Below, one piece after another: positions 1 to 32,941 of a DNA stretch of 64,000 nt (positions are counted from its first letter, which is position 1; the number at the start of each line of letters is the position of its first letter). Source of the stretch: Amphiscolops sp. MND2022 (lineage: Eukaryota). The stretch is taken from contig OZ076412.1 in assembly GCA_964187785.1 (NCBI GenBank), forward strand, positions 54,746,001-54,810,000. Direction: 5' to 3'. Position numbers and translations under genes: made by a program. Below the pieces are notes generated by a model, which worked only from the letters and a program-made list of their open reading frames with translations, did no database searches and was not told where the DNA came from.

Positions 1-575
1 TTTCCTGCTGTTTTGCCTTCTTCACTGGTGGTGGCTCCAACGCTGCAGTTCGAGTGCTATCAGGCGTCACAATTTGAGGACTCACTGTTAGATCATCACC
101 ATCTTTCGTCTCTTCGTCTTCTGTTGTGCAGACCAGAACTTCTGGGGAGACTTGTGGTGATGGAGATGCAGGTTCATGTTCAACTCCCCAAAAATCTCAG
201 TGAATCAACCTCCCTGAAGAAACCCATTTGATTCTCCGTTAATGGAACCATTGCGCAGTCGTCTCTACACAGGATGCGTTTGATTTGTATAGGTAGCATT
301 GGTAGGTCACAACGATGAAGACTTTCTATATCCCAGTTAGACGCTGCTTCACAGTCCACAGAGTCAATCTTTCTCTTTCTTTCCAGAATCGTCTTTTCAG
401 TCGGTTGTTTGCTCAACTTGTGATAGACCATGTTTGGTAACAGAATATGTTGCTTTGTTTCCCACCGGTCATTTTCGTCAGACCTCATCTGTTCAATTAT
501 TGAGAGCGCTTTTTGAAATTGTGTTTCATAAATGATGAAGCGTTTGCTTGTAAAATGTGTAAAGACAGTAGCCAT
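1..575 (-). CDS. Maverick hypothetical protein, apparently frameshifted at the A5 run 190-194 and continuing off the left edge
   Basis: ORF 180-575 ends DSLRFLGS*. Removing one base in the run gives DSLRFWGVEHEPASPSPQVSPEV...PPPVKKAKQQE, open to base 1, with an NLS-like PPVKKAK. Confidence 0.5.
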
Positions 576-991
576 AGTTGAATCGTCGACTTGGACAAGA
601 CCAACTGTTTGAGCGGTAGCGAATTTATCGAATAACGGCTTGAGTTTTGAACGCTAGTGAATCTACAGTTTTTTTTGTTTCTCACGGTGGTCCGATTTCC
701 ACATGGTAACAATGTGTTTTGAATTATTACATCGAGTCTATTTTGATTTTTCAGATGTTTTGAATTTTAACACCAGTGTCGTGGCCTGGGCGTTTGCGGT
801 CTACTTGAAAGATCAACGTGGGTGGTAATGATCTTGATTTATCAGTCGGCGGTGCAAGCGTTTGTTGTTTACATGAAAGATTAAAGCAGGGTGGCCAAAC
901 CTTGAACCATAAAAGCCCGCCCACCTCAGACATTGACCTTGCAATATTTACCAGGTTCTTCATACTTTTGATTTTGTTTCCAACATTCAGA

Positions 992-1387
992 ATGTTCTCT
1001 GGTGATTTTACTCTTGCTAAGGACGAGGATTTTGGAGACTATTACTGTGACTTATCAGAAAAATCCAACAGAATATTGCGAGCAACGGTGAAAACATACG
1101 AGCATACAGGAACCTACGTGTTTCTAAAACTCTTCAAAAAGAAGCCAGACGCTGAATTTGCTCTGGTTCAAAAAATCACGTTGACAAAAGAAGAATTTGA
1201 AATTCTACTGTGGAAAGGAAAATCAGTTCTACAACCGTCGAATATCAAAAAAGTTACAAAAAAGTGCAAAAAAATTAAGAAACCCTCATTTGTTGATTCT
1301 GTGGCGGAGGAGGATGACGGGGACAACGTAGACGGAGAAAACAAGGAGAATATTGATCCTAGAAAGTATGGTGGAAGCAATGTTTGA
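992..1387 (+). CDS. PC4-like ssDNA-binding/coactivator-fold protein (Maverick accessory)
   Basis: RILRATVKTYEHTGTYVFLKLFKK...QKITLTKEEFEILL fits the beta-rich plus helix pattern of the PC4 domain, followed by a basic/acidic tail. ATG at 992 preferred over the near-cognate start at 818. Confidence 0.5.
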   Translation: MFSGDFTLAKDEDFGDYYCDLSEKSNRILRATVKTYEHTGTYVFLKLFKKKPDAEFALVQKITLTKEEFEILLWKGKSVLQPSNIKKVTKKCKKIKKPSFVDSVAEEDDGDNVDGENKENIDPRKYGGSNV

Positions 1388-1958
1388 GCGTTCTCCCGAT
1401 TACTTTAAGCAATTTAGAAAAAACTTTCGCTTCTTTTTATTCAAGGAAAAACCCAAAGCTGGCGTGGACTTCCCATTAGATGTTGTTATTTCCATTGGCT
1501 TACACTCACCTGTGCATGATGGGCTTTGTAACGCTTTGCCAGACAATCACTATCATGTTTTGGCCCAGTGTTTTGGTGAAAATTATAAAGGGCAACCCAA
1601 AAGTTATTTATTACCATGTTTATATTCAACCTACGCCTTACTAATTGCAAACAGTGATGAAAAGGAAATATGTGGTGAAATTTTTGAAAAATTGGATCAA
1701 GCCGTTCAATACAATTGTGACCCTCCTAATCGAAACCCAAAGAAACTCTTGCCATCAATCTGTTTTTCTGTTCAAAAATGTGACAAGGCTGTGCAAGTCA
1801 GCTCTGGGTTGAGTCAAGGAACAATACAACGCTTGGAAAATGTTATGCTTGGACCGTATGGTGGTCATTTCCTACTCATTGCTGATATTTTTCAAACTGG
1901 TCACGGATCGCTTAATTTTGTGCCTGTACTAACCTTTTCTCTGAATGAAATTGTTTGA
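1380..1958 (+). CDS. Maverick accessory protein with an HUH-like motif (DNHYHVL)
   Basis: Open 192 codons. The ATG overlaps the end of the upstream ORF (aATGTTTGA), as in coupled viral genes. Function uncertain. Confidence 0.55.
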   Translation: MFERSPDYFKQFRKNFRFFLFKEKPKAGVDFPLDVVISIGLHSPVHDGLCNALPDNHYHVLAQCFGENYKGQPKSYLLPCLYSTYALLIANSDEKEICGEIFEKLDQAVQYNCDPPNRNPKKLLPSICFSVQKCDKAVQVSSGLSQGTIQRLENVMLGPYGGHFLLIADIFQTGHGSLNFVPVLTFSLNEIV

Positions 1959-1988
1959 GAAGAAAAATGTTTGAAATTAAACATTAAA

Positions 1989-2429
1989 TTACATGAGAGT
2001 TTTTACAAAGCGAAGCAAATCAGTTTCAGAAATGTAAGAAATCAATGGATAATACGAACTTAACAAAAAATGAGCAATATAAATACAATACAAACCACAC
2101 AAGTTTGAATTTTGATTTTGTAACGGCGTCTTTGTGGCATCTTTTAATGTCTGCTGAACTTGGATTGGTATCGCGGAGATTCTTTTAGCAATATTAGGAT
2201 AATGTAAAAATAGGTCTAGTCCAAGGGGATCTGCAAAGTTGAAAGTACCTTTCACGTTGCTCCAAACAATCCAATGTTTCCCAGCGCTGTTTGAGTTTTC
2301 TGAATTGACAATTACAAAAGTGTTGTTGGGTAATAGGATAGGAAACTTGTCTGCGGGATAAATTTCTCCAAACTTGTATTTCAATCTTGGGCTGTTTTTT
2401 ATTAGGTGGGCAATGTAATCTTCATCCAT
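1989..2429 (-). CDS. Adenain-like cysteine (maturation) protease
   Basis: Motifs IVN...GKHW, FADPLG and QNQNSNLCGLYC; the His/Asp/Cys triad is intact. Confidence 0.93.
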   Translation of the reverse strand: MDEDYIAHLIKNSPRLKYKFGEIYPADKFPILLPNNTFVIVNSENSNSAGKHWIVWSNVKGTFNFADPLGLDLFLHYPNIAKRISAIPIQVQQTLKDATKTPLQNQNSNLCGLYCIYIAHFLLSSYYPLISYISETDLLRFVKTLM

Positions 2430-2432
2430 TTT

Positions 2433-3740
2433 TCAAGTGGTAGGGTTTAACATGACGTTTTTGGAGACTTTTCTATGAGAGTCAATGTAAATTGTTGATG
2501 CTTTTTCGCCCAACAGAAACACCTCAGTGTTCACTGCCAGCGCTGCTGAAAACTTCAACTCGAGCGAAATGGCTGCGTTAGTGAGCTCAGGATAAAGAAA
2601 ATCATGAGATGCTTGTTGGGTGCTAGTCAGGTCAAACACCATTACAAAATGATTAGCATAGTCGGCGAAAGGAATTCCATGTCCATGATGACCAAAGGCG
2701 AGAGCATCCATTGTTGACATGTAAACTCGTTTTAGATCATCTGTTGCCAAAGGAGTTCCTGCAACAGGGTATCCATTCCGGTAAACAGTAACTTCGTTTA
2801 GGTTATGTTTTTGGTAATGAAATGGATTTGTGTCTTTTGAACCAAGAAAAGACGCATTACTGACGAGCGCCAAAGCGAATCGTCGAATTGGTTCTCGACT
2901 GAAAACGTCTTCCTTACTCCAACTGCGACTACCTGTCGGAATGAGAAAAGTTTTGGGTAGAACCTCTGTGTACCGATACAGAGCTGGAGTTTTTGTCAGA
3001 GTTTTCTCTATGGCTATAAAAACCTGCTCAGAAACTGTCATTTTCCGGACGTAAAGATTGGCTTGGGTAATGGTAATTTTGTAATTTTTTGCAACGTCAT
3101 CATGAATCAAAACAAACTCTGGTTTCGAACGGACAAAAGAAATTCGCAAAGTCACTCCACTCAGTAAATGTTTATCACAAGAAAATACATCAGCTGCAAC
3201 TTTTCCAAAAAATGTTAATTCTCCAGACTGTCTCGACTCCAATTCTCTGTTTGTAAATGGAGTTGTTGTACTGTTCCCAGGATGCTGCTCATATGTATAT
3301 CCTTGGCAACGTAACCATGTTTCTTTGGCTTCCTTGCCATTCGAATATTCGGTTTCAATAAAGGCCTTGTGTGCGTAAACACCGTTTGCATTGGAAATTT
3401 TTATTCCATTAGCAGTAACAGTGCATTCGGAGAATAGAGAGTGTAATGTATTATTCACAAAAATAGGAGTGTCTGTTTGTGTTGCATCCGTTGCATCATA
3501 TCGTAAGTCATTTCCATCGCTTTGTTTAATTTTGCATTTTATCTCGAGAAAAATTTTTTGTAGGTCCAAAAAATTATTTCGGTCTCCTACAACTTCAAAT
3601 TCCAATGTTGGTCCATTGGGGGAGTAAATCGGGCCAATCTTTTGTTCAAAGGAAGAGTCAAATGTAATCAAAACAGGTGATCGCTCAAAAATGTCGAGGG
3701 AACTATGTGAAGCTTCGAGTGGTAAAATATTAGGCAACAT
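2433..3740 (-). CDS. Major capsid protein (double jelly-roll, hexon-like)
   Basis: GPTLEFEV...FLDL...FVNNTLHSLF and the C-terminal VFDLT...LELKF match the Maverick/adintovirus MCP. Likely start MLPNILP at 3740, overlapping the end of the upstream ORF. Confidence 0.92.
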   Translation of the reverse strand: MLPNILPLEASHSSLDIFERSPVLITFDSSFEQKIGPIYSPNGPTLEFEVVGDRNNFLDLQKIFLEIKCKIKQSDGNDLRYDATDATQTDTPIFVNNTLHSLFSECTVTANGIKISNANGVYAHKAFIETEYSNGKEAKETWLRCQGYTYEQHPGNSTTTPFTNRELESRQSGELTFFGKVAADVFSCDKHLLSGVTLRISFVRSKPEFVLIHDDVAKNYKITITQANLYVRKMTVSEQVFIAIEKTLTKTPALYRYTEVLPKTFLIPTGSRSWSKEDVFSREPIRRFALALVSNASFLGSKDTNPFHYQKHNLNEVTVYRNGYPVAGTPLATDDLKRVYMSTMDALAFGHHGHGIPFADYANHFVMVFDLTSTQQASHDFLYPELTNAAISLELKFSAALAVNTEVFLLGEKASTIYIDSHRKVSKNVMLNPTT

Positions 3741-4104
3741 TTTTGACTTTTGAAAAGAAATCGGACCGACTTCTCTGTTTGCGTTTTGATTTCGTAATGG
3801 TTTTTCGTTTCTTTGAAGAACGTTTGCTTTTTCCACCAATCTGCTTCTTTATCGTCTTTTTCATAGCTGTTTTAGCAGCCTCACGTGGCGATTTTCGCTT
3901 TGCAATAACATCAAAGACCTCAGGGACACTTTGAACGAGCAATTCTTTGCCAATTTTTTTTGCAGCAGGTAAAATAAAATTTTTTGCAAAGGGTAAAGCC
4001 ACTCGGCCAATACCGGCTGCCAGTGCACCAATTCCACTACCTCGTTGTCTGTTGTAACTGGCGAAATGGGGTAAATACACTTGCTTTGAGTAATAGTCTT
4101 CCAT
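3730..4104 (-). CDS. pVII-like basic core/DNA-packaging protein
   Basis: MEDYYSKQ...RQRGSGIGALAAGIGR (protease-cleavage-like G-x-G-x-G) with a Lys/Arg-rich tail, lying between mCP and MCP. TAATG overlap with the mCP stop. Confidence 0.8.
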   Translation of the reverse strand: MEDYYSKQVYLPHFASYNRQRGSGIGALAAGIGRVALPFAKNFILPAAKKIGKELLVQSVPEVFDVIAKRKSPREAAKTAMKKTIKKQIGGKSKRSSKKRKTITKSKRKQRSRSDFFSKVKNVA

Positions 4105-4970
4105 TAGGCGAATTTTTTAAATTTTAGGGTCAAAACAACTTGACCTTTACCACAAAAGGGTACCAGGATCCCAGTCTCTGTTCTGAGTTGAATGCTTATT
4201 GTTTGAATATTTTGAACCAACAGTTTCTTGTATTGTAAATCAAAAAATGATCTTGTTTCCAAATTCTGGGTTGTCACGACCTTGCCACTTTCAACACGTT
4301 TCCCACTATCAATGATTCTCAAAACGGGTGCTTTTACGTCGCCCGTGTTTTGATATTCAATCAAATCAGTGTAAACAAGAATTAGACTAATGCCAGAAAT
4401 CAAATCCACCGGAAAGTCATTCACAACCCATCTACTGTTCAGGATGTCTTCGTTTCCTATATGAATACCAAAAGCAGTCTCTTTTCCCTTGAATCCAAGT
4501 AGGTTGGGAATGTTTCTGTTAGGAAAAGTGTAGCCAGCATATGCATCAAATTTAATTTCTAGGCCATTTTCGGTGGATCTATGTTTACCGTCTTCCGTGA
4601 GTAAATTTACTTTTGAACGCATTTCAAAAAGTAGGTTGTTGATATGACTGTACATCGAAGGTCTTATCTTTAGTTTTTGATAATATGGAACAACTGGTTC
4701 AGAGTCAATTTCAATTTCCTCTGCTTTTTCTTCATCAATTTCGTCAATGTTTTCTTCATCTTCCTTCTTTTTGGTAGTGTGAACGTAATAAAAAAAGTCT
4801 GTGTAAACGTTATTAATTTCCGAGGGAAAAATAATTTCTGATAGAGCCACACGCCAGTCGCCTTCCAGGGAAATATTTTGTGGGAGTTGATTTTTGAATG
4901 CTGCCAATGTATTGCCACCAAAAATTTCTAATGACGCTGTGGATAATAAATGAACTTCAAATTCGTCCAT
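4104..4970 (-). CDS. Minor capsid protein (penton-like)
   Basis: FEVHLLSTAS...NTLAAFKNQLP...LEGDWRVALSEI N-terminus and YTDLIE...LRII...ISIQLRTETG...F C-terminus are typical of the Maverick mCP. Confidence 0.88.
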   Translation of the reverse strand: MDEFEVHLLSTASLEIFGGNTLAAFKNQLPQNISLEGDWRVALSEIIFPSEINNVYTDFFYYVHTTKKKEDEENIDEIDEEKAEEIEIDSEPVVPYYQKLKIRPSMYSHINNLLFEMRSKVNLLTEDGKHRSTENGLEIKFDAYAGYTFPNRNIPNLLGFKGKETAFGIHIGNEDILNSRWVVNDFPVDLISGISLILVYTDLIEYQNTGDVKAPVLRIIDSGKRVESGKVVTTQNLETRSFFDLQYKKLLVQNIQTISIQLRTETGILVPFCGKGQVVLTLKFKKFA

Positions 4971-5955
4971 TTTTCTTTTTCACCAAAATCAATTCAGGCT
5001 GATAAAACTTGCCCAAGAGTTTTTCCTTCTCAGAGTCCAGTAAGTTGTAAGTTGGGGGATTGAGAGTTGCGATTTTTTCAATTTGAAAAATTTCGTCGGT
5101 AAAATTCTGTTTGTAACCTTTTTTGAAGGGTAAGTTTTCTTTTGACACTCTCACAAAGTCACCGACTCTGAATTTCGGCACTCGTAGCTGTTTAGTGGAC
5201 TTGTAAGAAACCAGAGAAATCAAATGAGGTACATCTTTATCTGAAACCTTCTTTGGAGCCAATCCTGTCACTCGGTTTACTCGTGAATTTATGATGTCAA
5301 CAAAGTCATGGAGTTTTTTGATGTATTGATAAGACCATCTCTTTTCCAAATGTTTATATATAATGTTTTTTAGAGAACGAATATTACGTTCTGCAAAAGC
5401 AGATTTTGTCTCACTATGAGTGCTGTAAATGTCAATGTTTTTGGAATCGCAGAACTGCTTAAATTCCCCTTTAAACTCTGATCCCTTGTCTGACCAGATT
5501 TTTTCGGGAATGGACTTTGTTATCATTCTTTTGAATGCTCTTGTTGAATCTGCTGCACTTTTTGTTTTCATTGGTTCAACCCGTAGGAATCTCGATAGTA
5601 CATCAACTGCAACTAGCAAGTATTTCACACCGTTGTTGTATTTTGCTAATTTGTCCATATAAGCAACATCTATCGACCAAATCTCATTGATTCTGTAAGC
5701 TTGAACCTTCAATCGTGGAAATTTTTTTCTGGGAGCGTGATATTTTGTATGAGCGTCTGTTTGAGCCAAAAATGTTTCCACTTTCCTTTTTGGAAGCTTA
5801 CTAGCTTTTTTCAAGTTTTCAACGCTACCATAAGCAGCTGGACCTTGTGTGTAAAGTTTCTCGAGGGTTTTTCTTTCAGATTCCGAGAGATGTCCATATT
5901 TTCGATCCAGACGCTTTGCTTTTAGCAATTTCTTCAGATTCTTCGTTGCTGGCAT
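4957..5955 (-). CDS. Retroviral-like DDE integrase (c-INT)
   Basis: WSIDVAY, LLVAVDVLSRF, WSDKGSEF and AERNIRSLK give an intact D-D-E, followed by a KFRVGDFVR SH3-like tail. No chromodomain is seen. Confidence 0.96.
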   Translation of the reverse strand: MPATKNLKKLLKAKRLDRKYGHLSESERKTLEKLYTQGPAAYGSVENLKKASKLPKRKVETFLAQTDAHTKYHAPRKKFPRLKVQAYRINEIWSIDVAYMDKLAKYNNGVKYLLVAVDVLSRFLRVEPMKTKSAADSTRAFKRMITKSIPEKIWSDKGSEFKGEFKQFCDSKNIDIYSTHSETKSAFAERNIRSLKNIIYKHLEKRWSYQYIKKLHDFVDIINSRVNRVTGLAPKKVSDKDVPHLISLVSYKSTKQLRVPKFRVGDFVRVSKENLPFKKGYKQNFTDEIFQIEKIATLNPPTYNLLDSEKEKLLGKFYQPELILVKKKNGRI

Positions 5956-6460
5956 CTGATTCGTCTCGAGTGGGTTCTGCTCTCTTTCTTGTTGTACTAG
6001 GGTTCAAAATGTTTTTGACGTTCCGGTTAGGCACTAAATTAGGATTTACCATCAATTCTTTAAGAATGATAGAGTATGAAGGATCAGTTAGGTTTTTGTT
6101 GGGTTGCTGCAGATTATAAAGAAATGTTGAGAGCGAAATTTTTGTGGAAATTTTGTTTACTGTAATATCGCCTGTTTCATCAAAATCAATTGTTTCGGAA
6201 GATTCAATTTTGTTCAAAATTTCTCTCGTTCTTTGTTTTTGTGCCGCTGTGAGCATATCCAAAGACTTTAAAATATTTTCTTTACTGGTTTTTTCTTTCT
6301 TTTCTACTGTTGAGGGGTCCGGAAAAGTATTGTTTCTTTGCAGTAGAGTGAGAGACTTTGCCTTTTGTTCAACTTCTGGGTCTCTCAAAACTTGCAGTGT
6401 GGAGTGTTTCTGTTGAGTATAAAAACTTTTTGGGATAAGTACAAATTCTTGGGTGTTCAT
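5876..6460 (-). CDS. Conserved Maverick hypothetical protein between ATPase and integrase
   Basis: QKQRTREILNKIESSETIDFDETGDITVN...STFLYNL pattern recalled from Maverick proteins. Its end overlaps the integrase start. Confidence 0.7.
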   Translation of the reverse strand: MNTQEFVLIPKSFYTQQKHSTLQVLRDPEVEQKAKSLTLLQRNNTFPDPSTVEKKEKTSKENILKSLDMLTAAQKQRTREILNKIESSETIDFDETGDITVNKISTKISLSTFLYNLQQPNKNLTDPSYSIILKELMVNPNLVPNRNVKNILNPSTTRKRAEPTRDESDASNEESEEIAKSKASGSKIWTSLGI

Positions 6461-6483
6461 AACGGAATTCAATCTGTCAGGTA

Positions 6484-6771
6484 TTAGAAACAAGGCCGAA
6501 TAATAAAGTTTAACAATTTGAGACCTTTTGGTGACATTAAAATTTTTCTGCGTTCCTTATTGGAGGTAGACCTTTTACAAAGTAATCTGAGTTGAATTTC
6601 GTACTGTTTTAATTCGTCCACGTTGATACCAACCGTTCCATTCACAACATTGATTGCACACTCGCAACAAAATTTCAAAAATTCCTTGTCACAATGTCGT
6701 AGAAGTTTTTGTTGCTGTACTGAAGTGAGTTTTTCCAAGAGACTGAGTGTATGCAAATTTTTCTCGCTCAT
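6484..6771 (-). CDS. Small conserved Maverick/adintovirus protein
   Basis: LLRHCDKEFLKFCCECAINVVNGTV...YEIQLRLL...RRKIL matches the small protein usually found just downstream of the ATPase. Confidence 0.7.
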   Translation of the reverse strand: MSEKNLHTLSLLEKLTSVQQQKLLRHCDKEFLKFCCECAINVVNGTVGINVDELKQYEIQLRLLCKRSTSNKERRKILMSPKGLKLLNFIIRPCF

Positions 6772-7412
6772 TGTTAATTTCTGTAATTTTTGCTTGTGAC
6801 GAAGGCAAATAAAATATTGTTGGTCCTGGTCCTACAATGTTTGAACAAAAGCGTAGACATTCACTTGTCTTTGGATCCAAATCAATGAGTAAATGACCAT
6901 GTGGTTCTGCAACAGCGTCTGTGTAGCACTCTTTTAGAAATACAGCTTTGTTTAATTGTCTTCCAAGATATTCAATTTGCTGTGTGTCACGAGGAGAATT
7001 AAAAAATAATGTGGGTTGTGTTGAGGTCAATTGTACGTGACCACTTACTTTGATGATACAAATTATGTTTGACAAAAATACAGTTAATTCCTCTGTGTCG
7101 GCCAGAGACTGCAATTTTTGCAAAGTTTTTATCTTGGTAAATTTCTTCGCAAGAGTCGTCAAATATCAGCAAACACTCCTGAAGCGTCTTTATCAAATCA
7201 AAATCTAGACAACTGATAAACTCGATGTTCATCCGTTTTTCCACTTCTTTGAAAATTTGTTGGAACTCGCGATAAAAGTAGTAAATTTTTTGAAAGCGTG
7301 GATAAAAGGTCTTGGATGTGAGCATAGAAAAAATCAGTCGGGTTTTTCCAGATCCAGATGGTCCAACAACTGACATGAAAACTCTTTCTGTAGTAAAAAT
7401 GATTTTGTTCAT
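6689..7412 (-). CDS. FtsK/HerA (A32-like) packaging ATPase, split by a frameshift at 7001-7006
   Basis: Walker A GPSGSGKT, Walker B LLIFDD and GRHRGI lie in one frame; NSPRDTQQIEYLGRQL...PHGHLLIDL lies in the next frame. Confidence 0.92.
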
Positions 7413-7687
7413 AATTTTGGGCTAGGTAAAAGATATCCAACTGATCCAGCCAAAAGTGATGTCCAAAATGGCATGTCTTCACATGATACTTCAAAAAAGA
7501 TTAGTTTCACCAGACAAATTGTTATCACAAAGAAAGCTGAGAATACATGAACAAAAAATATAACTTGCGATCGTGGTATGTTTGTAGCAAAACAAAATTT
7601 CCAGGCTGGTCTCTCGTTATTCTCTTTATCGAACACAATTTCCTGACATGATAATACATCTGGTAAATCAACTGTTTCTGAACCCAT
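7409..7687 (-). CDS. Small two-helix membrane protein
   Basis: Two hydrophobic segments (QVIFFVHVFSAFFVITICLVKLIFF; FWTSLLAGSVGYLLP) ending GYLLPSPK. The stop overlaps the ATPase ATG. Confidence 0.65.
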   Translation of the reverse strand: MGSETVDLPDVLSCQEIVFDKENNERPAWKFCFATNIPRSQVIFFVHVFSAFFVITICLVKLIFFEVSCEDMPFWTSLLAGSVGYLLPSPKL

Positions 7688-8022
7688 TTTTCAAAAAGTG
7701 TACTACGAAATTATTAAATTCAATTCCAATTAATTGTACATTATTACACACACGTTGTATATCAGAAATGGTTCAAAATTGTTAAATAAAATGTTAGTAC
7801 AAAAGATACAAAAAAATTGTACTGCGGAACATCATTCATTGTTTCCTTAGTACGTGCCGGACCTTGTGTGTCGTTTACACAAGTTTTTTGTTGGCTGTCA
7901 ATGTTGAGGTAGGTTAAGGTGCAGAGACAAGATTTTTCTTGCCATTGAGGCACCGAAGGACTACACTACAGAGAGAGTTAGTTTCAAAACAAAAAAAGCA
8001 TTATATCAAATCACACAAAAAG

Positions 8023-8367
8023 TCAGTTCAAACTTTTGCTCCTTGGTAAGACGAATATTCTTTGGGTTTCCAGCATTATAAATGAATTCCATTCTTTGTC
8101 TTTTGTTTCCAAATCGATTTTGAATTTTGAGCCAGTTTTCCCGGATCCGTAATAGAACCAAATTCTGAGGACACTTTTGGATTTGACTACGTCCCTCACT
8201 TCTTGTGGTAGATTCGGGCAATTTTTGTCAATTTCGACAGGAGGAGGTGGCCTGGAAATGTGCATGTTTAAAGGAGGTAGTTTCTTTTTCATCCTGGACA
8301 GTTTTGAGTCTCGTGCACTAGAAGCTACTGACATATTCTTTCCAAAAGTCCTGCTTGCTTCCACCAC
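8023..8367 (-). CDS. Maverick hypothetical protein, possibly a second PC4-like domain
   Basis: Same orientation as its neighbours. LRIWFYYGSGKTGSKFKIDLETKDKEWNSF loosely resembles the PC4 C-terminal motif. Start uncertain. Confidence 0.4.
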   Translation of the reverse strand: MVEASRTFGKNMSVASSARDSKLSRMKKKLPPLNMHISRPPPPVEIDKNCPNLPQEVRDVVKSKSVLRIWFYYGSGKTGSKFKIDLETKDKEWNSFIMLETQRIFVLPRSKSLN

Positions 8368-8371
8368 ACCA

Positions 8372-8941
8372 CTATTGTTTGGAACAGCCTACACACAGAC
8401 GCTCAAGTTTGGAGTCAACTTTTGATTGGTTTGCATTGCGCCTACTCTCTAACCACTGATAAGCAACAGCAGTTTTCAATTTACTGCAATGCCAGAAATG
8501 TTGTTGTTGACTATTCCATGGGAGAAAGTTTGCGTGGTTCCCACAAGAAACCACAGCATTAACACATAAATGTTTAATTGGGGGACAACCAAGCCTTTGC
8601 AAAATGTAAACTTTTTTAAAATAGTTGGAGATAAATGCTCTCTTCACATGTCCGTCGACAAAAACAATTGCGTTGGGAAAACGAAGTCGTAAACTGGCCA
8701 AATAATTATGGATAGAAGTGTAAGGGTAAACGCCACTGTCCCAGTCAATACCGTGTATTCTTTTTGTTAAGAATATTATCGAGTCGCGGTTAATAGTTGA
8801 AATTGTAGAAAAGGCTTGAGGAGGTTTGAAAAGTAGGGTTTCTTGATAATTTTTACTGTGAACGCTCAGCTCTTTAACGATAAGACCGTTGTAGTCAAAC
8901 CCTTCAAAGTCAATAACAAGAATTTCGTTCTCATTCAACAT
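8372..8941 (-). CDS. DEDD/DnaQ-like 3'-5' exonuclease-fold protein with a Cys/His-rich C-terminus
   Basis: LVIDFEGF (ExoI D-x-E), KEL, FKPP, HGIDWDSG, GCP and C..H...C pattern recalled from Maverick accessory proteins. Confidence 0.6.
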   Translation of the reverse strand: MLNENEILVIDFEGFDYNGLIVKELSVHSKNYQETLLFKPPQAFSTISTINRDSIIFLTKRIHGIDWDSGVYPYTSIHNYLASLRLRFPNAIVFVDGHVKRAFISNYFKKVYILQRLGCPPIKHLCVNAVVSCGNHANFLPWNSQQQHFWHCSKLKTAVAYQWLESRRNANQSKVDSKLERLCVGCSKQ

Positions 8942-9351
8942 TCCAAGTCACGGAACCAGTGGGCTTGTGCTGAATATTTGAGTTTCAAAATGCTCCAGAG
9001 AGGGCGAACTGAGCATGACCAAAACTTTTGCAATCTGGTTCTTCTATCCAAGCAGTCACACACGTCACTAAACGCCCCCATAAGCTCTTGCGAGTCGCGA
9101 ACAATCACAAATAATCTGTACACTTTGCAATACTTGTAGAAACTTTCACATTTGATTTCTGGTTCTTCTTTCAGCAAATATTTCAAATGGTCCAAAGTAA
9201 TGTTGTTGAAGTTGCAATTTTTTAGATATACCAAACAAAAACTTAGCACATACTTTTGATAAGTTTCGAATTTGTCCGAATTGTCTAATGAAAGTCTATG
9301 AAAAGTTTGCTGCACTTTTACAACGTCTATTTTTTGGGGGTCCATTTCCAA
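8935..9351 (-). CDS. Maverick hypothetical protein (first gene inside the right end)
   Basis: 138-aa ATG-started ORF whose end overlaps the ATG of the next gene; no family recognised. Confidence 0.55.
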   Translation of the reverse strand: MEMDPQKIDVVKVQQTFHRLSLDNSDKFETYQKYVLSFCLVYLKNCNFNNITLDHLKYLLKEEPEIKCESFYKYCKVYRLFVIVRDSQELMGAFSDVCDCLDRRTRLQKFWSCSVRPLWSILKLKYSAQAHWFRDLEC

Positions 9352-9779
9352 TTTTGATTCTCAGCATTCCTTCCTGCTGCTGATATTTCCTTTATAATGA
9401 ATTTTTATCAAAACACGTTCGTAACATCAGACGAATAATGCATTCGAACAAAACTGTACATAAATTTCACACCCTCTCGTACCCTATTAAACTTTGGTGT
9501 GAGTTATACGACAAACTAGATTACTTTTTATTGGCCGATCGATCGCTTGGCACAACAATACTACAACCCGACTTAGTTGTTGTACCAGTATTAGTCAATC
9601 CAGCTTTACAATTCAATTACAACAAAATTTCAAGGTTAGTACTTTCCAAATTTCAGACATTCAAAGAATAAACAAGAATGTCTACGCTTTTACATGTACT
9701 TTCGCAAAAATCCGATTCCAAAAACGAATACAAAAAGAATCCGACCAATAATTTACTTTCGCAGTCAAAAGCCGAAGTA

Positions 9780-9905
9780 TTTCCGAACACCAATTTGGAA
9801 GGACCCCTTCCTTTTAGGGATAGGTCCTAAAATTTCAGAGCAAGGACCCACCCCGTGAAAACCGAGGACCCCCCCGTTGAAAGGCCGGCTGAAATCTTAA
9901 CTACT
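9780..9905. repeat. Maverick terminal region (outer part of the presumed TIR)
   Basis: Non-coding, with repeated AGGACCC motifs, ending ACTACT. The partner TIR is outside the window. Predicted 6-bp TSD is TATATG (9906-9911). Confidence 0.6.
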
Positions 9906-10541
9906 TATATGCGTGAGCTCTGAATTTCTCAAGCTGCCGACGACAATCGTTTCTCGTGCGATAATGGAGCGAGTGGTAATTGTGAATTCGTACGCCGAAT
10001 TTATTGAGATGAAGCAAGCAAATGTTCGTAATTATGCTTTCAGTCGCCGAAATGAAAAGTGTTAGTTTGAAACGAACGAGTGTTAATTATTCGTTCGCCG
10101 AAAGTTTCGCCTGCAGTTGTATGCGAACACGGAACTTCGTCTACGCTTAGTAGTTGTTTTCTTTAGTCCGAGAAGAATTAAAGACGGTATACACTGGTAG
10201 AGTGATTACACTGTTGGACGCTGAAAATTTGCGAAGCGACATTCAATCAGATGAAAATTCGGTTTTCTAAATAGACATTCAAAATTCCCATATCGACATT
10301 CAGTTTTAGTAATCTCTCAGCATTTTGAATGTCTATTTTGTTGAAATTGATTGTCTATTTTTTGGAATTAGCCAATTATAATCGAGATTGTTAAAGCAGA
10401 CTGATTTTATAAAACAAAATTGACTGTCGTTTTGCAAACTTTTAACATCCTTCGCTGTAGTTGTGCGCTATATAAATGATTGATATGCTTCTATTATTGA
10501 AAATGAAAGCCTAAAAGCAGAAATAACACTGTGCCCCGCAG

Positions 10542-13500
10542 GGACCTATTTTGAGTTATCAAACTGTTGAAGGACGAACTTGCCAACCCTCATAGTACCA
10601 AATCTTACGAGCGCGCTCTAATGCATGCAATTTTCCGTTCATATTCCTTATGGTTAAAAAATGATTTCTCAGCCGCGTTTTTTTCCCAAATTCAGCGATG
10701 TTCCAATTTTATACTCAAAATAAGGTCGTTAGACGACAAAAAAGCTCGGATCGTAGCTTGTTTCGGAGAATTTTAAACTTTTGAAAAGGTTCTTACATTT
10801 GTCATTTTTAACCGTTTTATACATGTTTTGTAAAATTTTTGAATGTTTTGTAGCATGAATATATACAGATTTCAAAGACAAAATGAATTAGCTTATAAAC
10901 GTACATCTTAGAAATCTGTTTTTTGGAAGAAATAGAAAAATTTAAGGAAAATAACAAATTTCATGCAATTTTTTCTGCAGTTCTCGCTAATGATGTCGCT
11001 AAAATAATTCACGGCGGAAAGTATTTCGGTACTCAGCAGGCGACTTGTTTTAACTCACACCGTGTTCCCGCGCGAAAGGTGTGTTCCCTGGTATTGTTCG
11101 TTTTGACTTTTTGAGACCCTTAGTTCGCTACTTGTACTACATTTGATTTTTTGAACTTTTTCCGACAAGTTGAATGTATTCAAGATGGAGCTAAGCTTTA
11201 TTTTTCTTTTGGCCGCTGTGTTTGAATACATGATGTGTTTAGATGAAAAAATTGAGCGATTCAACTTGAGCTTGGAGTGTTCCGTCTGCTTGGAATCAGC
11301 GAAAACCTTATATCTAATGTGCGAAGAGCATATGACGAAATTGTCAATGATTGATTCCGATGAGAGTTCTTCAAAATTGCCGGTCACAGCTCCTGGAAAC
11401 AGCAAAAGTGCATCTAACCAGAACCGTGGCTCAAAGAAACCAAAAGGAAGCAATAAATCTAATTCTGGGCCGGGTTCGAGGTCTCAGAAATGTGCAGAAA
11501 AGAAGGAAGGAGACAGTACGCCATTAACGATTTCAGACTATTCGTTCAGTGGTGGTGAAGCACTCTTGAAGCGTTTGGGCAACGTCAACAATGAGCTCGG
11601 CAAAATGTTTGAAAACAAACTCATTGATGTCGGGATTGTACGCTTAAATGGTAATTTAACGTTTTCGCGAGTTTTCTTTATTTTTCTTTTTTTTCAAGAC
11701 ATCGCGATATCTGGGTTGGCTAATTATTATCAAATGATCATAATTATAATCAGCTTGATTAAATATATTTTAACCATAATAGATTAAAATCAGCCGAAAT
11801 AGCCAATTTTTGACGTGGATGAGTTATTTGGTCTGCGAATCAATATTTTCTGACTTTCGTTCCGAGCATGTGTTGTCATCACTAGGCTTGGTTCATTCGA
11901 AGACTAAACACAAGCATTTTCATCGCAAAACGTTGGTTTCAGACTTCAAGAAGATGAGCGAGCCTTTAGATTATACTGCATGCTATGTACGGCGCTTTAA
12001 TCTTGAAAGACTTTCTACCTTTCCTTTTAGTTATTATACATTTAATCCATTGTGTGAATATATTCAGTTTGTATTTAGAGAAGGATTCCATGTCGAATGC
12101 TGAAGAGTTTTTGGATAAAAGCAAAAGCTGTTTCAACGAAGCACTGCAATGTTTCGTCAAAAGTAACGACAGAATTAACGCTGGAATGGTACTCAGCAAC
12201 AATGGACGCCTTTTCCGAATCTGGGCTCACTTGTTGGCTCTTCATGATGCAAAACATGATTGGTTGGTTTTTAAAAATTTACTTCAAATCTAGCATAAGT
12301 CACCTTATTTCGGAATACAGAACCTTTGCTCCGCTTTTATATTGTGGTCGAAAATTTTCGACTTTTGTAATGTGTTTTGATACCAGAAATCTATGGTAAA
12401 GTTGCGAGTTCAAATTTACCTGTTTCTTATTATCAGTCTTATTAAATTGTTTTCAGCGATGAAAACACCAGTAGTAACAACAGCGAAGTTGGTGAGGATG
12501 GTTTGAATGGTAGCGGCGATGCCCGGAAAGACAAGCCCGAGAAACACGGTGTATCACCCACCCAAAAGAATTTTTATTACAAGGTATGCAAGTTAGGGCT
12601 ATTGCGATTTTCCCTCTATCAGTATCGAACGTTATCACAGTTTGTATCGAATCGCAGAATACCTGAACACTTTTTTATTCGAAGAAATAATGCAAACGGG
12701 CCCAAGTCGATATCCCTCGTCTCGTCAATCTTTAAAAGTTATTCTGTACAAAAATGTACCCTGTAGAGTCTGGTCTGAGGAAAGAAAACGCCCCATTGTA
12801 ATAAAGTAACAGCCGGGCCAAACGCACCGCTTGGAAAACTCGTCGAATGAGAGTCGGAAAGCGGAAAAAACACGGACTAGAAACAACATCATCAACGTGT
12901 ACAATTCAGTGTATTCGGAAAGTTATAGACTGAACAATAGCAGATTTGCAATATTGAAGTTTTTTGGTTGAAGTTGAACCAAGAAGTTTTGCTAGTTCCC
13001 AATTTCGTTCAGGTACACTTAAAGAAACGTCGTGGGAATATTTAGACTTTGTTTACTGATGCATATTTTCAATTTTCAGTTTTCATCATTTAATCAAATA
13101 TGAATCTGTTTCAAAATCATGTATGAACTATAGTTCTTTGAGCTGGTCTTCGGCTATTCTTTGTAGATTCATTAGGCAATTGGGACCATGTGATCTATTT
13201 CCCCCAGGTACACCTTGTTAGGAATTCCCCCCCCCCCCCCCCAAAAAAAAACGAAAACGGCTTTTTCACAAGTATATTAATTATTGAATGAATAAAACAA
13301 GTTGATATGCTTACAAATACTAACAAACGCGTGAATTTAAACTTCGTGGCAAAAGACCCAAATTTTTTAAATGCTGAATGCAAAGTTCGTAGTTTTGTAG
13401 ATATGGAAGTATGTCCATTTGGAAGCACATTTCAAAGAATAATGATTGATTTTAACTGTCAATCAATGTAAAAGATATGATTATGTCGACATCAATTATT

Positions 13501-16500
13501 TTATTGGACTAAAATTTCAACGCAACGATGTCGACATAATGGTATTTGACTATTTAAAATGTTATGTCGACATAATTAATTCGTTTAAAACTAGTATTTG
13601 AACCTACTGTATTATTTCCCCCCCCCCCCCCCCCCCGTGGCAGTTTGGGGGGGGGGGGGAAATAGATCACATGGTCCGGCAATTGTTTTGTTTTTCAGTC
13701 GATTGATTGCTATCGTCAAGCTGTGTCTTACTTGGAGAGTAGTGACAACCCCAAACTTTTAGACAGTGTTACTTGGGATTTATGCAGTACTTATTTCACC
13801 CTGGCCAAGAACCTTCAAGACTTTTTCGATGCCGCTACCTTGGATTGTATGGAGGAAATGAAGGAAGAAATTATATCGCTCTTCAATAAATCTCTCAAGC
13901 ATTGTGTGCCACCTGAGAGTCACCACTCGAGCCGCGATGAAACTATCAGTGCAGAAGAGGTCGAGTTTCTGAGGGAGAAATACTTGAATAGACTGGGTGA
14001 AATCCACCAGCGCCTCGGATCGCTCTACTACCATAGTTTCAGGTCAAGTTTTTAGTCGGCGCATTTTATAAGCAAATGTGCTCGAAAATTACTGTGACAA
14101 CAGTTTTTGTTTCGTTAGAACACAGAATGTATGCGCAGCAACCACTTTTTGAACAGTTTGTATACGCCGCCCATTGTAGAATACGCGCTTTCCAAGCACG
14201 TGGTCGTCGGTTCGATTCTCTGCCGAAGACTTAAAATATCTTTGTTTACGAACCCTTGACGTGTCAAAGGTCCTCTTTTTGGGTTTTTCCGCACTGTTGT
14301 ACTCCTCTTTCGAAAAGCCCCCTCTTGAAGTTTTTCGAAAACTGGTTTATTTCTCAAACTTCATAGAAACAGAAATTTGACATATCTGAAAGACTGTGCT
14401 TTTTTCGAGCCTTAAGCAGGACGCCTACTTTCTGTTTTGTTAATTCAGCATTGAAATCTTCAGCTTTTGATATGACTTAATACGGGCAGCATTTCATGAA
14501 ACATTGAAGCAGAATGATAACAATGAAACATGTCTTCCTCGTCTTCTAAGCTCAAATAGAAAATTACTCGCTGAACTCTTGCGTTTTTGACTTTTCCACC
14601 TCAAATTCCTTAAATCTTAGTGTTTGAAAACTACGCTCACTGGACACCGGGATATTTTTGCTCTTAAATGTTCCATCATAGTTTGTTTATATAGTCTTTT
14701 AGGCTCTCTACAGTGAGTTTTTTGTTAGCCTATGATGTTTTAAAAGCGACTGATAAGTTAACTTTTCATTGTCACATAAGTTTCATATGTAGGGCGGAAA
14801 ATGAACGTTTGGAGTGCATGGTTTTTGCTTGTTTAGATTTGACTCATTGGCAAACAAGAGTTGTTACGCTATGGCTGAAATGCATTACTCCAGAGCAGCT
14901 GAGTGCTGTATTTTACAGTTGGCTAAAAATCCTAGTGCGACAATGTCTCCAAAACAGAAACAAAATTCGAAGACAGGCGGCGAACAGAGCATTGCTTACG
15001 TGTACAAGCCAGAGCATGACGCAATGCTAGCACAAGTCCAGTTGGAAAGAGTGGCTCTTATTGAGGTGCAACTGACAGGTAACAATAATCTGGCTTACTT
15101 CAGGTGTAAAACGTCTCAAATCTAGTATCAAATTAGCACCGGGTTTTTACTCGAACTGAATATTCACGTTTAAATTTTTCCAGGGATGTCTTTTTCTCAC
15201 ATTTGAATATTGCCAAAAATTATTAGTTTGCCTACAATTGTCGAGCTTTTTATACGAAGCCAACAGTCCAAATAGATTGTATGACTCTTCGTCTTGTCAT
15301 TTACGTCCCGTCGGAAAGTTGGCATATGAGACGGCAACGGCAGTATAGGAGGCATTTTTCTGGACGTTGGATTCTGGCTTAATTTGTTTTCGTTACAACT
15401 GAGATTTATTTTTGACAGGATGTTCGTGTCCAAGTGCGTTTCTTGATGGCTCCGTTGCAGTACTTACGCTTGTCAACGGGGCGACCCACCAGCAGCCATC
15501 AACAGGGGGCCCTGTTGTCGGAGTTCATTGTGGGGCCACCAGTCCCGACTGGTGGCAACTTACGTCACCGCTTGCGTCCAATGGCAAGTTGGCGAGGGAT
15601 TTTGAGGGAGTTCCCCTTCTCCCAGATGAGGATAAAGAAAAAATAAGAGGCTCGTTCATTCTGCTGGTCTTTGAGACAGTGAGAACGAACAGAGGGCGTT
15701 TCTTCTGAAGAGAAGTGTATCGCTCCAAAATGAGTTGTCAGCATCGAGGGAGTCCTTGATTTCCGGAATTTTTTCATTGTTTTTTTAGCGCTTTTCTGAT
15801 AGAACACTGCAAGGAAAGTTATTGTTCTTGCCTATGCATACGTCTTTCGTGTTGGGCACCCTGGTGACGTTCTCTTCAATTTGGTTCTCAGAAGCCGCGT
15901 TCCTGTCCTGTGGTTCCCACTCATTTCTTTCCCAACTTTGCATGGCCTGAGTTCTGGTGCGAACGGTTTGTTTCCAAAATTTTTGATCGCTCGTCAGGCG
16001 TTCCAGATCTGTCCAATCTTCTGCTTCTTTTGTGAGACGTTTCCAATGGTGCGGGATTCCTTTGAAGGTTTCTCTGGCACGGGTTTACTGGCTTTATCTT
16101 TTTGTCCCAGGACCATCACGCGTTTTGTGAGAGTTGCTGAGGTTTGAAGTTGTTGAACAAATGCACAAAAGAGTGGACCTTACGCGTTTAAAAAAAACGG
16201 GTGTCAGTCATTCTTAAGATGTTCCCCATTCTCTGGAGGGATCTTGACTCAATCTTTGCTCGTACCGATAGGATGCCAAGTTGCTTTCGAATCTCAAACA
16301 TGGTAATTTGGAGTTGTTGCGCGTCTTCAATGTCAGTCCTCTGTTGTCGTTCCACACGGTAGCATTTGTCCACTCCACAATGGATTGCAGCTTGTTGCAT
16401 TCTGTGCTTGTCCATGTGGCTGTTGGACAACAGGGTGGCTTCTACGGTTTCTTGAACAATTATTGCTCTTGTTCTCCAGAGCGTTGATTTGTAGAACCAT

Positions 16501-31736: not shown

Positions 31737-32418
31737 ATTGATTTTCGGATTATCTAAAGCTGTTAGCAATCAACTATTTTGTTTGATTTAAATTCAATTA
31801 AATTTTTAGCTTACATGCTGCTCATTTTATTTTTCGATGCTTCCAAATGCTACAATCTAAGTATAGTAATGAAGCGTTGAAAAACATTTTTTTAAATAAT
31901 GGGCCTGTTTGCAAACTTCGATGCTATAGCTCCAGCAAGGCTTTTATTTTTTGCAAGATCACGACGAAATGAGATAACACTGCAAATAGGAAAACTACAA
32001 AAAAAGGTACTACGAAGAAACGCATATGCAGGATACGTAATGTAAATTTGCGATTCAAATTGTGATGGGTGCTCAAAGTTGTGGATAATCGGTTGTGAAT
32101 TAACATCAATAATATCATTAATATCAATCGCTTTTGATATTCACGTTGTGTCGCTCAAGACACTGGGACATTTTCATGTGCTACTCCCTGCAATGAGTAC
32201 TCGTTACATCAGAACGTAACAGCAGTGAAAACGAAACGAAATTATCTTTCACCGGTCACCGGAAATTGACCGCGGTAAAGTCTTCGTTTATTTTCACTAC
32301 TGTTTTTGTTTTCAGCTACTAATCGTTTCAGTAAACAGTATGTTGTTTTCACAGTCAATGAATTGTCAAGTAAAATGTTTATGCATAGGCCATTTTGCTT
32401 CCAGTTTTTTTTAGAATT

Positions 32419-32941
32419 ATGGCTCTCTGTCGTGTAGCTCTGAGGGCTCGATTGAGAAGTTTCGCTCGCTGCCATTGGACTGCAACTAATATGACGCCTC
32501 TCATATCGTTACTTAACTTGTTAGAAGACGACAAAATAGACCCTAACTATTCGTTCAAAACTTATTTGGGATCCAGAATACAAGAATTAGAAAATGGGAA
32601 CGCTGAAAACCAGACTGTGCCTGCAGAAATCTTGCAAACATGTGAGCGTTTTTCTACTGATTTCTACAAGAAGAAATATAGTATACCTCCTGAAAAATAT
32701 ATCGGGGCCCTGGGTCTAGATTCTGAGCAAGCTGTTGAAATTAGGAAGATGGATCCTGCGTATATCTCCGGTGAGAAAAAGTGAAACATTCTATTCTTTA
32801 AACTGAGCTCATTTGTTTTGATATTTAGAGAAGACATACAATTTTTCTTCGAGGTTATTTTCTATTGTTGGCGGATTTCTATTTTGTATCTCTTCTGTTT
32901 TCTTCAAAGTAACCGTTGACGTTAAAATACGAGTAGAATAG
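32419..32941 (+). CDS. UQCC2: UQCC2-like complex III assembly factor, two exons (32419-32770, 32829-32941)
   Basis: YLGSRIQE, RFSTDFYKKKY and GALGLDSEQ parallel human YLRQRVAQ, RLHSNYYKHKY and SGLSLEE. 58-bp GT-AG intron; Arg-rich N-terminus. Confidence 0.65.

What the first reader, a model, noticed from the sequence alone, without database searches (positions are those of the whole stretch)
1..9905. Near-intact Maverick/adintovirus virion module, probably inside an EDRF1 intron
Protease triad, MCP, mCP, pVII-like protein and integrase DDE are all uninterrupted, genes overlap as in a live virus, and the AGTAGT terminus is clean. The first EDRF1-like peptides, about 0.6 kb to the right, match roughly the last third of the human protein. 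The rest of the gene should therefore lie left of the element, which would make the virus an antisense intronic insertion in a housekeeping gene.
Basis: partly seen in the sequence, partly recalled or inferred. Interest (0 to 1): 0.7.

Follow-up and report, generated by a model that had tools for sequence, protein, structure and literature searches.

The report
Young Maverick provirus in EDRF1 intron
Window 1-9905 is the right-hand 9.9 kb of a 16.2-kb Maverick/Polinton (adintovirus-like) virus-like element that inserted very recently, antisense, into an intron of the host's EDRF1 gene; it is an ordinary member of a known class, notable for its youth and because the allele without the insertion is also on record.

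Summary
Window 1-9905 (genes on the minus strand) carries uninterrupted genes for an adenain-like protease, a double jelly-roll major capsid protein, a penton-like minor capsid protein, a small basic protein and an rve integrase. It ends cleanly in ...ACTACT at 9905. A public contig identical to window 1-9129 supplies the rest. That part holds a protein-primed family B polymerase gene, a left inverted repeat (about 330 nt, 97% identical to window 9579-9905) and a second TATATG. The element is therefore 16,183 bp long with a perfect 6-bp target-site duplication. A second contig of the same assembly holds the same locus without the element, with one TATATG. On that contig the EDRF1 exons are collinear on both sides of the site, so the intronic, antisense reading is supported. 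Three points qualify the finding. This copy has one frameshift each in the packaging ATPase, the polymerase and a 199-aa ORF. "pVII-like" is an analogy only. The first EDRF1 exon I can verify lies about 1.6 kb right of the element, not 0.6 kb. At least 11 contigs carry copies 99.5-99.8% identical, each with its own TSD and its own lesions. This is a new member of a known kind, of moderate interest.

The parts
1..9905 (-). Right-hand 9,905 bp of a 16,183-bp Maverick/Polinton element. The window's left edge cuts it, and the remaining 6,278 bp lie left of the window.
   Evidence: Public contig locus L004 is 100% identical to window 1-9129 and continues to the left terminus. Other copies align only up to 9905.
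9579..9905 (.). Right terminal inverted repeat, ending ...ACTACT (5'-AGTAGT on the element's coding strand).
   Evidence: Matches L004 15075-15407 in inverted orientation at about 97%. The terminal 23-mer is unique in the window. The sequence was read.
9906..9911 (.). Target-site duplication TATATG (right copy).
   Evidence: The left flank ends in the same hexamer (L004 15408-15413 reads CATATA on the opposite strand). The empty allele L005 has a single TATATG at 7003-7008.
8935..9345 (-). ORF of 136 aa, function unknown. First gene inside the right TIR.
   Evidence: Open here and in other copies. No Pfam or PHROG hit.
8372..8941 (-). ORF of 189 aa, function unknown.
   Evidence: Open here and in other copies. 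No family hit.
8023..8334 (-). ORF of 103 aa, basic, function unknown.
7409..7687 (-). ORF of 92 aa with a strongly hydrophobic segment (putative membrane protein).
   Evidence: Maximum Kyte-Doolittle 19-residue mean is 2.73. Conserved in other copies.
6689..7412 (-). Genome-packaging ATPase (A32/FtsK type). Broken in this copy by one frameshift.
   Evidence: Pfam Pox_A32 E=1.1e-6 with a Walker A motif. It reads as a single 241-aa ORF in other copies. In this copy it aligns in 2 pieces in 2 frames.
5876..6493 (-). ORF of 205 aa, function unknown. Its length varies between copies.
4957..5955 (-). rve-family integrase, 332 aa, uninterrupted, with D, D and E present.
   Evidence: Pfam rve E=4e-11. 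Aligns to retroviral integrase catalytic cores.
4104..4970 (-). Minor capsid (penton) protein, 288 aa, uninterrupted.
   Evidence: Model pLDDT 78. Foldseek hits: mavirus penton 3e-8, adenovirus penton base, Sputnik penton; adomavirus LO5, adintovirus and PLV proteins.
3730..4104 (-). Small basic protein, 124 aa, in the position of the Maverick 'PW' gene. Its role as a core protein is inferred only.
   Evidence: pI 10.9, K+R 26%. No family hit. Gene order compared with PMC8097293.
2433..3740 (-). Double jelly-roll major capsid protein, 435 aa, uninterrupted.
   Evidence: Model pLDDT 86, pTM 0.84. Foldseek hits Sputnik, PBCV-1, mavirus and iridovirus MCPs at E down to 9e-18. 316 homologues were found.
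1989..2429 (-). Adenain-like cysteine protease, 146 aa, uninterrupted.
   Evidence: Pfam Peptidase_C5 at 22.2 bits, above the cut-off. Alignment to SENP8 and adenain keeps H, D, Q and C.
992..1958 (+). Two overlapping ORFs (131 and 196 aa) on the opposite strand of the element, function unknown.
   Evidence: Called in this copy and in other copies. Open and 100% identical to another copy. No family hit.
1..575 (-). ORF that is 199 aa in other copies. Broken here by one frameshift and cut by the window's left edge.
11554..15092 (+). EDRF1 exons right of the element, mapping to profile positions 751-1014 of 1139. The verified pieces are at about 11554-11613, 12081-12248, 13690-14049 and 14961-15092.
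   Evidence: Pfam TPR_EDRF1 E=7.6e-8 and 5.1e-17. Profile of 13 orthologues.

Best explanation
This is an endogenous copy of a Maverick/Polinton (adintovirus-like) element: a 16.2-kb linear-dsDNA virus-like element integrated in the germline of an unidentified invertebrate.

Gene order from the AGTAGT end at window 9905 is:
- four small ORFs;
- the packaging ATPase;
- two small ORFs;
- integrase, penton, small basic protein, major capsid protein and maturation protease;
- accessory ORFs;
- the protein-primed family B polymerase;
- the left inverted repeat.

Shown here: the gene set, the inverted repeats, the 6-bp duplication TATATG, the insertion into an EDRF1 intron antisense to the gene, the existence of the uninserted allele, and a family of at least 11 copies 99.5-99.8% identical.

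Inferred from knowledge of the class:
- The integrase made the staggered cut that gives the 6-bp duplication.
- The polymerase copies the linear genome from the terminal repeats.
- The capsid genes, protease and ATPase would build and fill an icosahedral particle.

This copy has one frameshift each in the ATPase, the polymerase and a 199-aa ORF. If those are real, it is not self-sufficient. The lesions differ from copy to copy, which implies that copies were intact when they inserted.

The insertion adds 16.2 kb to an intron that spans about 6.6 kb between the two verified flanking exons in the empty allele. The flanking exons score identically in both alleles, so nothing in the sequence suggests that EDRF1 is damaged.
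For: - Gene identities.
- Polymerase: 10 of 32 relatives hit PF03175 (best E 4.6e-21). The ExoI D, the ExoII YD, DTDS and KxY columns are invariant or nearly so.
- Element bounds, TIR and TSD.
- Empty site with a single TATATG.
- EDRF1 exons on both sides, collinear in the empty allele.
- Family: the identical MCP sits on 11 contigs. Perfect 6-bp TSDs at five other sites, all with AGTAGT...ACTACT ends. Substitution identity to the window copy is 99.5-99.8%.
- Lesions in this copy.
- Match to published Maverick anatomy ((AGT)2//(ACT)2 ends, 6-bp TSD, mean size 16.9 kb, mean TIR 402 bp, module integrase-mCP-PW-MCP-protease): PMC8097293.
- Adintovirus gene set: PMC8502044.
Against: - The polymerase itself does not reach PF03175 in Pfam, and no solved pPolB is found by sequence. 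Its identity rests on relatives and motifs.
- The left 6.3 kb, the left flank and the empty site come from public contigs of one ENA assembly, not from the window. That assembly's contig ends inside the element at window 9129, so the join across 9130-9905 rests on the window record plus the TSD and empty-site logic.
- Some indel differences between copies lie in mononucleotide runs, so some frameshifts could be assembly errors.
- There is no expression data, so intron status is a gene-model inference.
- The 'empty allele' could in principle be a very recent paralogue.
- The host species is unknown.
Confidence: 0.9

Rival explanations
1. The element is not integrated. It would be a free viral or contaminant genome wrongly joined to host DNA by the assembler.
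For: The public contig that carries it ends inside the element at window 9129. Repeats of this kind often break or mis-join assemblies.
Against: - The two flanks come from different records, yet they carry the same hexamer.
- Those flanks are adjacent, with one hexamer, in an independent mid-contig record.
- Five other copies have their own perfect 6-bp TSDs inside long contigs.
Confidence: 0.03
2. The element lies between two separate EDRF1-derived fragments, for example a split or duplicated pseudogene. On this reading it is not inside a functioning intron.
For: No transcript data were available. Profile positions 664-750 and 1015-1139 were not located. The host protein is only 28-42% identical to the full-length references in the tblastn matches.
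Against: - The exons are collinear, on one strand and in the right order on a single contig in the empty allele.
- The exon scores are identical in both alleles.
- Only one contig carries the tested right-hand ORF.
Confidence: 0.08
3. The element is an old, fixed, decaying endogenous viral fossil rather than a recent insertion.
For: Three genes of this copy have a frameshift. The two TIRs differ at about 3% of positions.
Against: - An uninserted version of the locus exists.
- Copies are 99.5-99.8% identical. The two host haplotypes around the site are only 93-99% identical.
- Lesions are private to each copy.
- Five capsid-module genes are fully open.
Confidence: 0.05
4. The element is a polinton-like virus or virophage-type element rather than a Maverick proper.
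For: The best structural matches of the MCP and penton include virophage and PLV proteins.
Against: It has the pPolB plus rve integrase pair, an adenain-like protease, (AGT)2 ends and 6-bp TSDs. It also has the Maverick module order, in an EDRF1-bearing genome whose best orthologues are animal.
Confidence: 0.04

Closest known systems
Intact Mavericks of vertebrates (Barreat & Katzourakis 2021, PMC8097293)
   Same: - 5'-(AGT)2//(ACT)2-3' termini and a perfect 6-bp TSD.
- Size of 16.2 kb, against a published mean of 16.9 kb.
- TIR of about 330 nt, against a published mean of 402.
- Intronless ORFs.
- The module integrase - minor capsid - small 'PW' protein - major capsid - protease.
   Different: - The host is not a vertebrate. 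Its EDRF1 is only 28-42% identical to the full-length references in the tblastn matches.
- The ATPase lies upstream of the integrase and the polymerase downstream of the protease, all on one strand. This is not the two-module layout described for vertebrates.
- The polymerase carries N-terminal C2H2 fingers and an Endonuclease VII-like stretch.
- No sequence comparison with vertebrate elements was made.
Adintoviruses (Starrett et al. 2021, PMC8502044)
   Same: The same hallmark set: adenain, PolB (relatives are of the PF03175 type), rve integrase, FtsK/A32 ATPase, hexon-like and penton-like proteins, and terminal repeats. The penton model matches adintovirus proteins in BFVD.
   Different: - No PLA2X, gasderminX, cupiennin or 'Oncoid' gene was recognised.
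- The N-terminal OTU-like domain reported for adintovirus PolB was not detected by Pfam.
- There is no evidence here of a free linear form.
- Alpha or Beta class was not assigned.
Mavirus and other virophages; polinton-like viruses
   Same: A double jelly-roll MCP and a single jelly-roll penton, both among the best structural matches, plus a cysteine protease and a packaging ATPase. Mavirus also has an rve integrase and a pPolB.
   Different: These infect protists, and virophages depend on giant viruses. Sequence identity in the structural alignments is only about 10%. The termini, TSD and gene order here are those of animal Mavericks.
Adenovirus capsid module (hexon, penton base, adenain, IVa2)
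   Same: The penton model aligns to adenovirus penton base (TM about 0.55 normalised on the query). The protease hits Pfam Peptidase_C5.
   Different: There is no integrase in adenoviruses. Adenovirus genomes and hexons are much larger. No homology of the basic 124-aa protein to pVII or pX was found.

Membership tests
Maverick/Polinton | Protein-primed family B DNA polymerase | tested here: met
   - A large ORF lies left of the window (L004 10578-14746).
- 3620 homologues were found; 10 of 32 aligned relatives hit PF03175 (best E 4.6e-21).
- Exo and Pol motif columns are conserved.
- The protein itself does not reach PF03175.
- In this copy the gene has one frameshift.
Maverick/Polinton | Retrovirus-like (rve) integrase with DDE | tested here: met
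   PF00665 E=4e-11. D, D and E align to retroviral integrase cores.
Maverick/Polinton | Terminal inverted repeats with conserved end motif | tested here: met
   Window 9579-9905 matches L004 15075-15407 at about 97%. Ends are AGTAGT...ACTACT in every copy examined.
Maverick/Polinton | 6-bp target-site duplication | tested here: met
   TATATG lies on both sides and once in the empty allele. Five other copies have perfect 6-bp TSDs; one copy has unmatched flanks.
Maverick/Polinton | Double jelly-roll major capsid protein and penton-like minor capsid protein | tested here: met
   Foldseek on AlphaFold models.
Maverick/Polinton | Adenain-like maturation protease | tested here: met
   PF00770 at 22.2 bits against a cut-off of 21.3. 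Catalytic residues align.
Maverick/Polinton | FtsK/A32-type packaging ATPase | tested here: met
   PF04665 E=1.1e-6. It is intact at 241 aa in other copies and has one frameshift in this copy.
Adintovirus (as a virus) | Free linear genomes or virions outside the chromosome | not testable with these tools
   Only assembled contigs were available; there were no reads or particle data.
Adintovirus (as a virus) | Class-specific accessory genes (PLA2X or gasderminX with a pX-like tail) and an OTU-like N-terminus of PolB | tested here: not met
   No such Pfam hits in any element ORF. Sensitivity is limited because the original work used HHpred.
Adenovirus pVII-like core protein | Detectable homology to pVII | tested here: not met
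   No Pfam hit at E<=0.1 other than noise. Only basic composition and the gene's position support a core-protein role.
EDRF1 (host gene) | TPR_EDRF1 domain and collinear similarity to full-length EDRF1 orthologues on both sides of the element | tested here: met
   PF23723 E=5.1e-17 and 7.6e-8. Two of the three orthologue clusters looked up hold members named EDRF1. Exon map.
EDRF1 (host gene) | Exons on the two sides are spliced together (true intron) | not testable with these tools
   No transcript data were available.

The most novel reading that the evidence does not exclude
The family may be a currently active adintovirus-like lineage in a poorly sampled invertebrate. It has a dozen or more near-identical germline copies, each with private lesions. 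The EDRF1 insertion is still segregating, being present on one haplotype and absent on the other. If so, integration into the germline is ongoing or ended only very recently.
Probability: 0.35. Interest if true: 0.55.

Novelty: new member of a known kind. Interest (0 to 1): 0.38.

Why it matters
Mavericks are thought to be integrated viruses, but their particles have not been observed in animals (PMC8097293), and most copies in genomes are old wrecks. This locus offers a clean natural example: both element ends, the duplicated target, the untouched allele and a set of sister copies all sit in one assembly. That allows insertion age, target choice, the rate of decay and the effect of a 16-kb antisense insertion on a conserved host gene to be studied by description alone. 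It does not change what is known about the class.

Tried and rejected
Searches that led nowhere:
- Pfam and PHROGs gave nothing for the MCP, the mCP or the small ORFs. Structure prediction was needed for the two capsid proteins.
- An inverted-repeat search inside the window found no partner for the right end, because the left end lies outside the window.
- A sequence search of the polymerase against the PDB found only C2H2 fingers. A 32-sequence profile found only Endonuclease VII, at E=0.062.
- Rfam found nothing in the window.
- Two flank ORFs were not on record in the contig index.
- Host identification failed. Records carry only the ENA analysis accession ERZ25074608. The nearest named relatives are too distant to place the host: acoel, coral and snail proteins for the element genes, and bee, millipede and brachiopod proteins for EDRF1.
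- A literature search for an Endonuclease VII-like insert in Polinton polymerases found nothing relevant.

1. In one search my script joined the reverse complement of window 1-9905 to L004 9130-15407, the overlapping natural contig. The result was one whole-length string, saved in /scratch and used as a tblastn target. I stopped, did not use the file again, and compared the window and the loci apart from then on. The file was not deleted.
2. That hints at where the break lies. It is not repeated in this report.


Full report
**What is in the window**

Positions 1-9905 hold a dense array of ORFs, nearly all on the minus strand, many overlapping by a few bases.

- Pfam recognises an adenovirus-type protease (1989-2429; Peptidase_C5, 22.2 bits against a cut-off of 21.3).
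- Pfam recognises an rve integrase (4957-5955; E=4e-11).
- Pfam recognises a poxvirus A32-type packaging ATPase (within 6689-7412; E=1.1e-6).
- The protease aligns to SENP8 and to adenain with the catalytic His, Asp and Cys and the oxyanion Gln in place.
- The integrase aligns to retroviral integrase cores with D, D and E in place.

**The two capsid proteins**

These have no Pfam or PHROG hit, so I modelled them.

- The 435-aa protein (2433-3740) has 316 homologues. With 57 of them as the alignment it folds at pLDDT 86 and pTM 0.84. Foldseek against the PDB returns the double jelly-roll capsid proteins of Sputnik, PBCV-1, mavirus and iridovirus, at E 9e-18 to 1e-14.
- The 288-aa protein (4104-4970) folds at pLDDT 78. 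It matches the mavirus penton (3e-8), adenovirus penton base (TM about 0.55) and the Sputnik penton. In BFVD it matches adomavirus LO5, adintovirus and polinton-like virus proteins.
- Between them lies a 124-aa protein with pI 10.9 and a tail in which 24 of 60 residues are Lys or Arg. It sits where vertebrate Mavericks have the small 'PW' gene (PMC8097293). Nothing ties it to adenovirus pVII by homology, so that label is an analogy.

**Ends of the element**

- The sequence reads ...CTTAACTACT|TATATG at 9905/9906. The terminal 23-mer is unique in the window, and no inverted partner exists within 1-12000.
- Exact-protein look-ups found the same integrase on three other contigs of one ENA assembly (ERZ25074608). 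They also found a contig (locus L004) that is 100% identical to window 1-9129 and then stops at its own end.
- L004 continues past the window's left edge. It carries a large polymerase gene, an inverted copy of window 9579-9905 (about 97% identical) and the sequence ACTACT|CATATA.
- CATATA is the reverse complement of TATATG. The element is therefore flanked by a perfect 6-bp direct duplication and is 16,183 bp long.
- Other copies with unrelated flanks stop aligning exactly at 9905.

**The polymerase**

- Pfam sees only N-terminal C2H2 fingers and a weak Endonuclease VII-like stretch in it. The PDB sequence searches add nothing.
- It has 3620 homologues. Ten of 32 aligned relatives hit PF03175, the organellar and viral family B polymerase (best E 4.6e-21).
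- The alignment keeps the ExoI Asp, the ExoII Tyr-Asp, DTDS and KxY columns invariant or nearly so.
- I accept it as a protein-primed PolB on that basis.

**State of this copy**

- Measured against sister copies, the MCP, mCP, basic protein, protease, integrase and four small ORFs are uninterrupted.
- Three genes each have one frameshift: the ATPase, a 199-aa ORF at the window's left edge, and the polymerase.
- Some indel differences between copies fall in mononucleotide runs, so I cannot exclude assembly error for some of them.

**The family**

- The identical MCP sequence lies on 11 contigs, and its 90% cluster holds 131 sequence variants.
- Copies are 99.5-99.8% identical to the window copy by substitutions.
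- Five further copies have both ends in the fetched DNA and show perfect 6-bp duplications of different sequence. All end AGTAGT...ACTACT.
- One copy has unmatched flanks, and one of its flanking hexamers recurs beside a copy at a contig end. That suggests recombination or an assembly join.
- One copy is cut next to an LTR-retrotransposon gene.
- Different copies carry different ORF interruptions, and at least one shows every core ORF at full length. Private lesions imply that copies were intact when they inserted.

**The host gene**

- Pfam TPR_EDRF1 hits three + strand open frames right of the element: 7.6e-8, 5.1e-17 and a weak 0.016.
- A whole-library search with the best exon returned full-length proteins of 1114-1255 aa. 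I looked up three of their clusters. One holds bee proteins named erythroid differentiation-related factor 1 and another holds Lingula EDRF1. The third, from a millipede, is unnamed.
- tblastn with these proteins, and a profile built from 13 of them, place the left-flank frames L004 18602-18949 and 18088-18375 at profile positions 457-540 and 596-663. These frames are on the window + strand.
- The right-flank exons fall at 751-771, 784-839, 855-960 and 971-1014 of 1139.
The first exon I can verify is at about 11554.

**The empty site**

- A look-up of the 102-aa ORF at 11985-12293 returned a different, mid-contig record (L005).
- L005 matches the left flank at 96.6-97.4% and the right flank at 93-99.2%, but lacks the element.
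- At the junction it reads left flank, one TATATG, then right flank.
- On this single contig the EDRF1 exons are collinear on one strand. The target site lies about 4 kb after the exon for positions 596-663 and about 2.5 kb before the exon for 751-771.
- The exon scores are the same in both versions.
- The insertion is thus intronic, antisense to EDRF1, and absent from the other allele (or, less likely, from a very recent paralogue).
- The two host haplotypes differ more from each other around the site than the element copies differ among themselves. That points to a recent burst.

**Comparison with what is known**

- The published anatomy of intact vertebrate Mavericks is (AGT)2//(ACT)2 ends, 6-bp TSDs, a size of 16.9 +/- 1.7 kb, TIRs of 402 +/- 276 bp, intronless ORFs and the module integrase-mCP-PW-MCP-protease (PMC8097293). 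This element matches on every point tested.
- The adintovirus hallmark set is adenain, PolB, rve, FtsK, hexon, penton and ITRs (PMC8502044). This is also met.
- The adintovirus accessory genes and the OTU-like PolB N-terminus were not detected with the tools at hand.
- This is therefore a new member of a known kind. The host is unidentified and is not a vertebrate, to judge by the divergence of its EDRF1.

**Mechanism**

- Shown: the gene content, the ends, the duplication and the polymorphic intronic site.
- Inferred from the class: integrase-made 6-bp staggered integration, protein-primed replication from the terminal repeats, and capsid assembly with protease maturation and ATPase packaging.
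- This copy, with three frameshifts, is probably not self-sufficient.

- In one search a script of mine joined the window part and the overlapping contig part of the element into one whole-length string to use as a search target. Nothing was altered or printed.
- This report gives counts only.

Noticed in passing
L003 16918-20997; L004 10578-14746 (left of the window): The family's polymerase carries N-terminal C2H2 zinc fingers (CTCF-like, residues 4-88). It also has an Endonuclease VII-like His-Me stretch between the ExoI and ExoII motifs. 23 of 32 relatives hit PF02945. A literature search found no description of this in Polintons.
   Followed up: partly
window 9129 / L004 position 1: The public contig that is identical to window 1-9129 ends there, inside the element and about 450 nt before the terminal repeat. 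The window must therefore come from another assembly version, and its join across 9130-9905 is not independently covered.
   Followed up: partly
L005 4024-4741, 6255-6883, 7892-8693: The allele without the Maverick carries three insertions of about 630-800 bp that the window haplotype lacks. One is MITE-like, with short inverted ends, and lies about 120 nt left of the Maverick target site. The locus is therefore rich in insertion polymorphism.
   Followed up: partly
window 24424-28168 (-): Remnant of a BEL/Pao LTR retrotransposon (Peptidase_A17 E=1.6e-29; DUF1759 gag-like E=2.4e-25), broken into several ORFs.
   Followed up: partly
window 18474-20155: A tandem repeat with a unit of about 560 nt. 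The self-overlapping matches to L005 suggest that the copy number differs between the two haplotypes.
   Followed up: no
window 42661-43068, 44403-44819, 59673-60071, 63144-63560 (+): Four dispersed copies of a repeat carrying a similar ORF of about 135 aa with no family hit. It is probably an unclassified transposable element.
   Followed up: no
window 33300-34739 (+): A 479-aa intronless ORF with a C-terminal hydrophobic tail and no convincing family hit. Just upstream, the ORF at 32395-32784 has a weak UQCC2/CBP6 match (E=1.5e-4, below the cut-off).
   Followed up: no
L002 / L012 (contig ctg183804): One family copy stops matching at window-equivalent position 6253. A 1677-aa gypsy-type gag-pol ORF lies about 5.7 kb beyond that point. 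This is either a nested insertion or a truncation.
   Followed up: no
L008 and L014: One copy has unmatched flanking hexamers. Its right-hand hexamer recurs beside a copy that lies at a contig end. This could be recombination between copies, two haplotigs of one site, or an assembly join.
   Followed up: no
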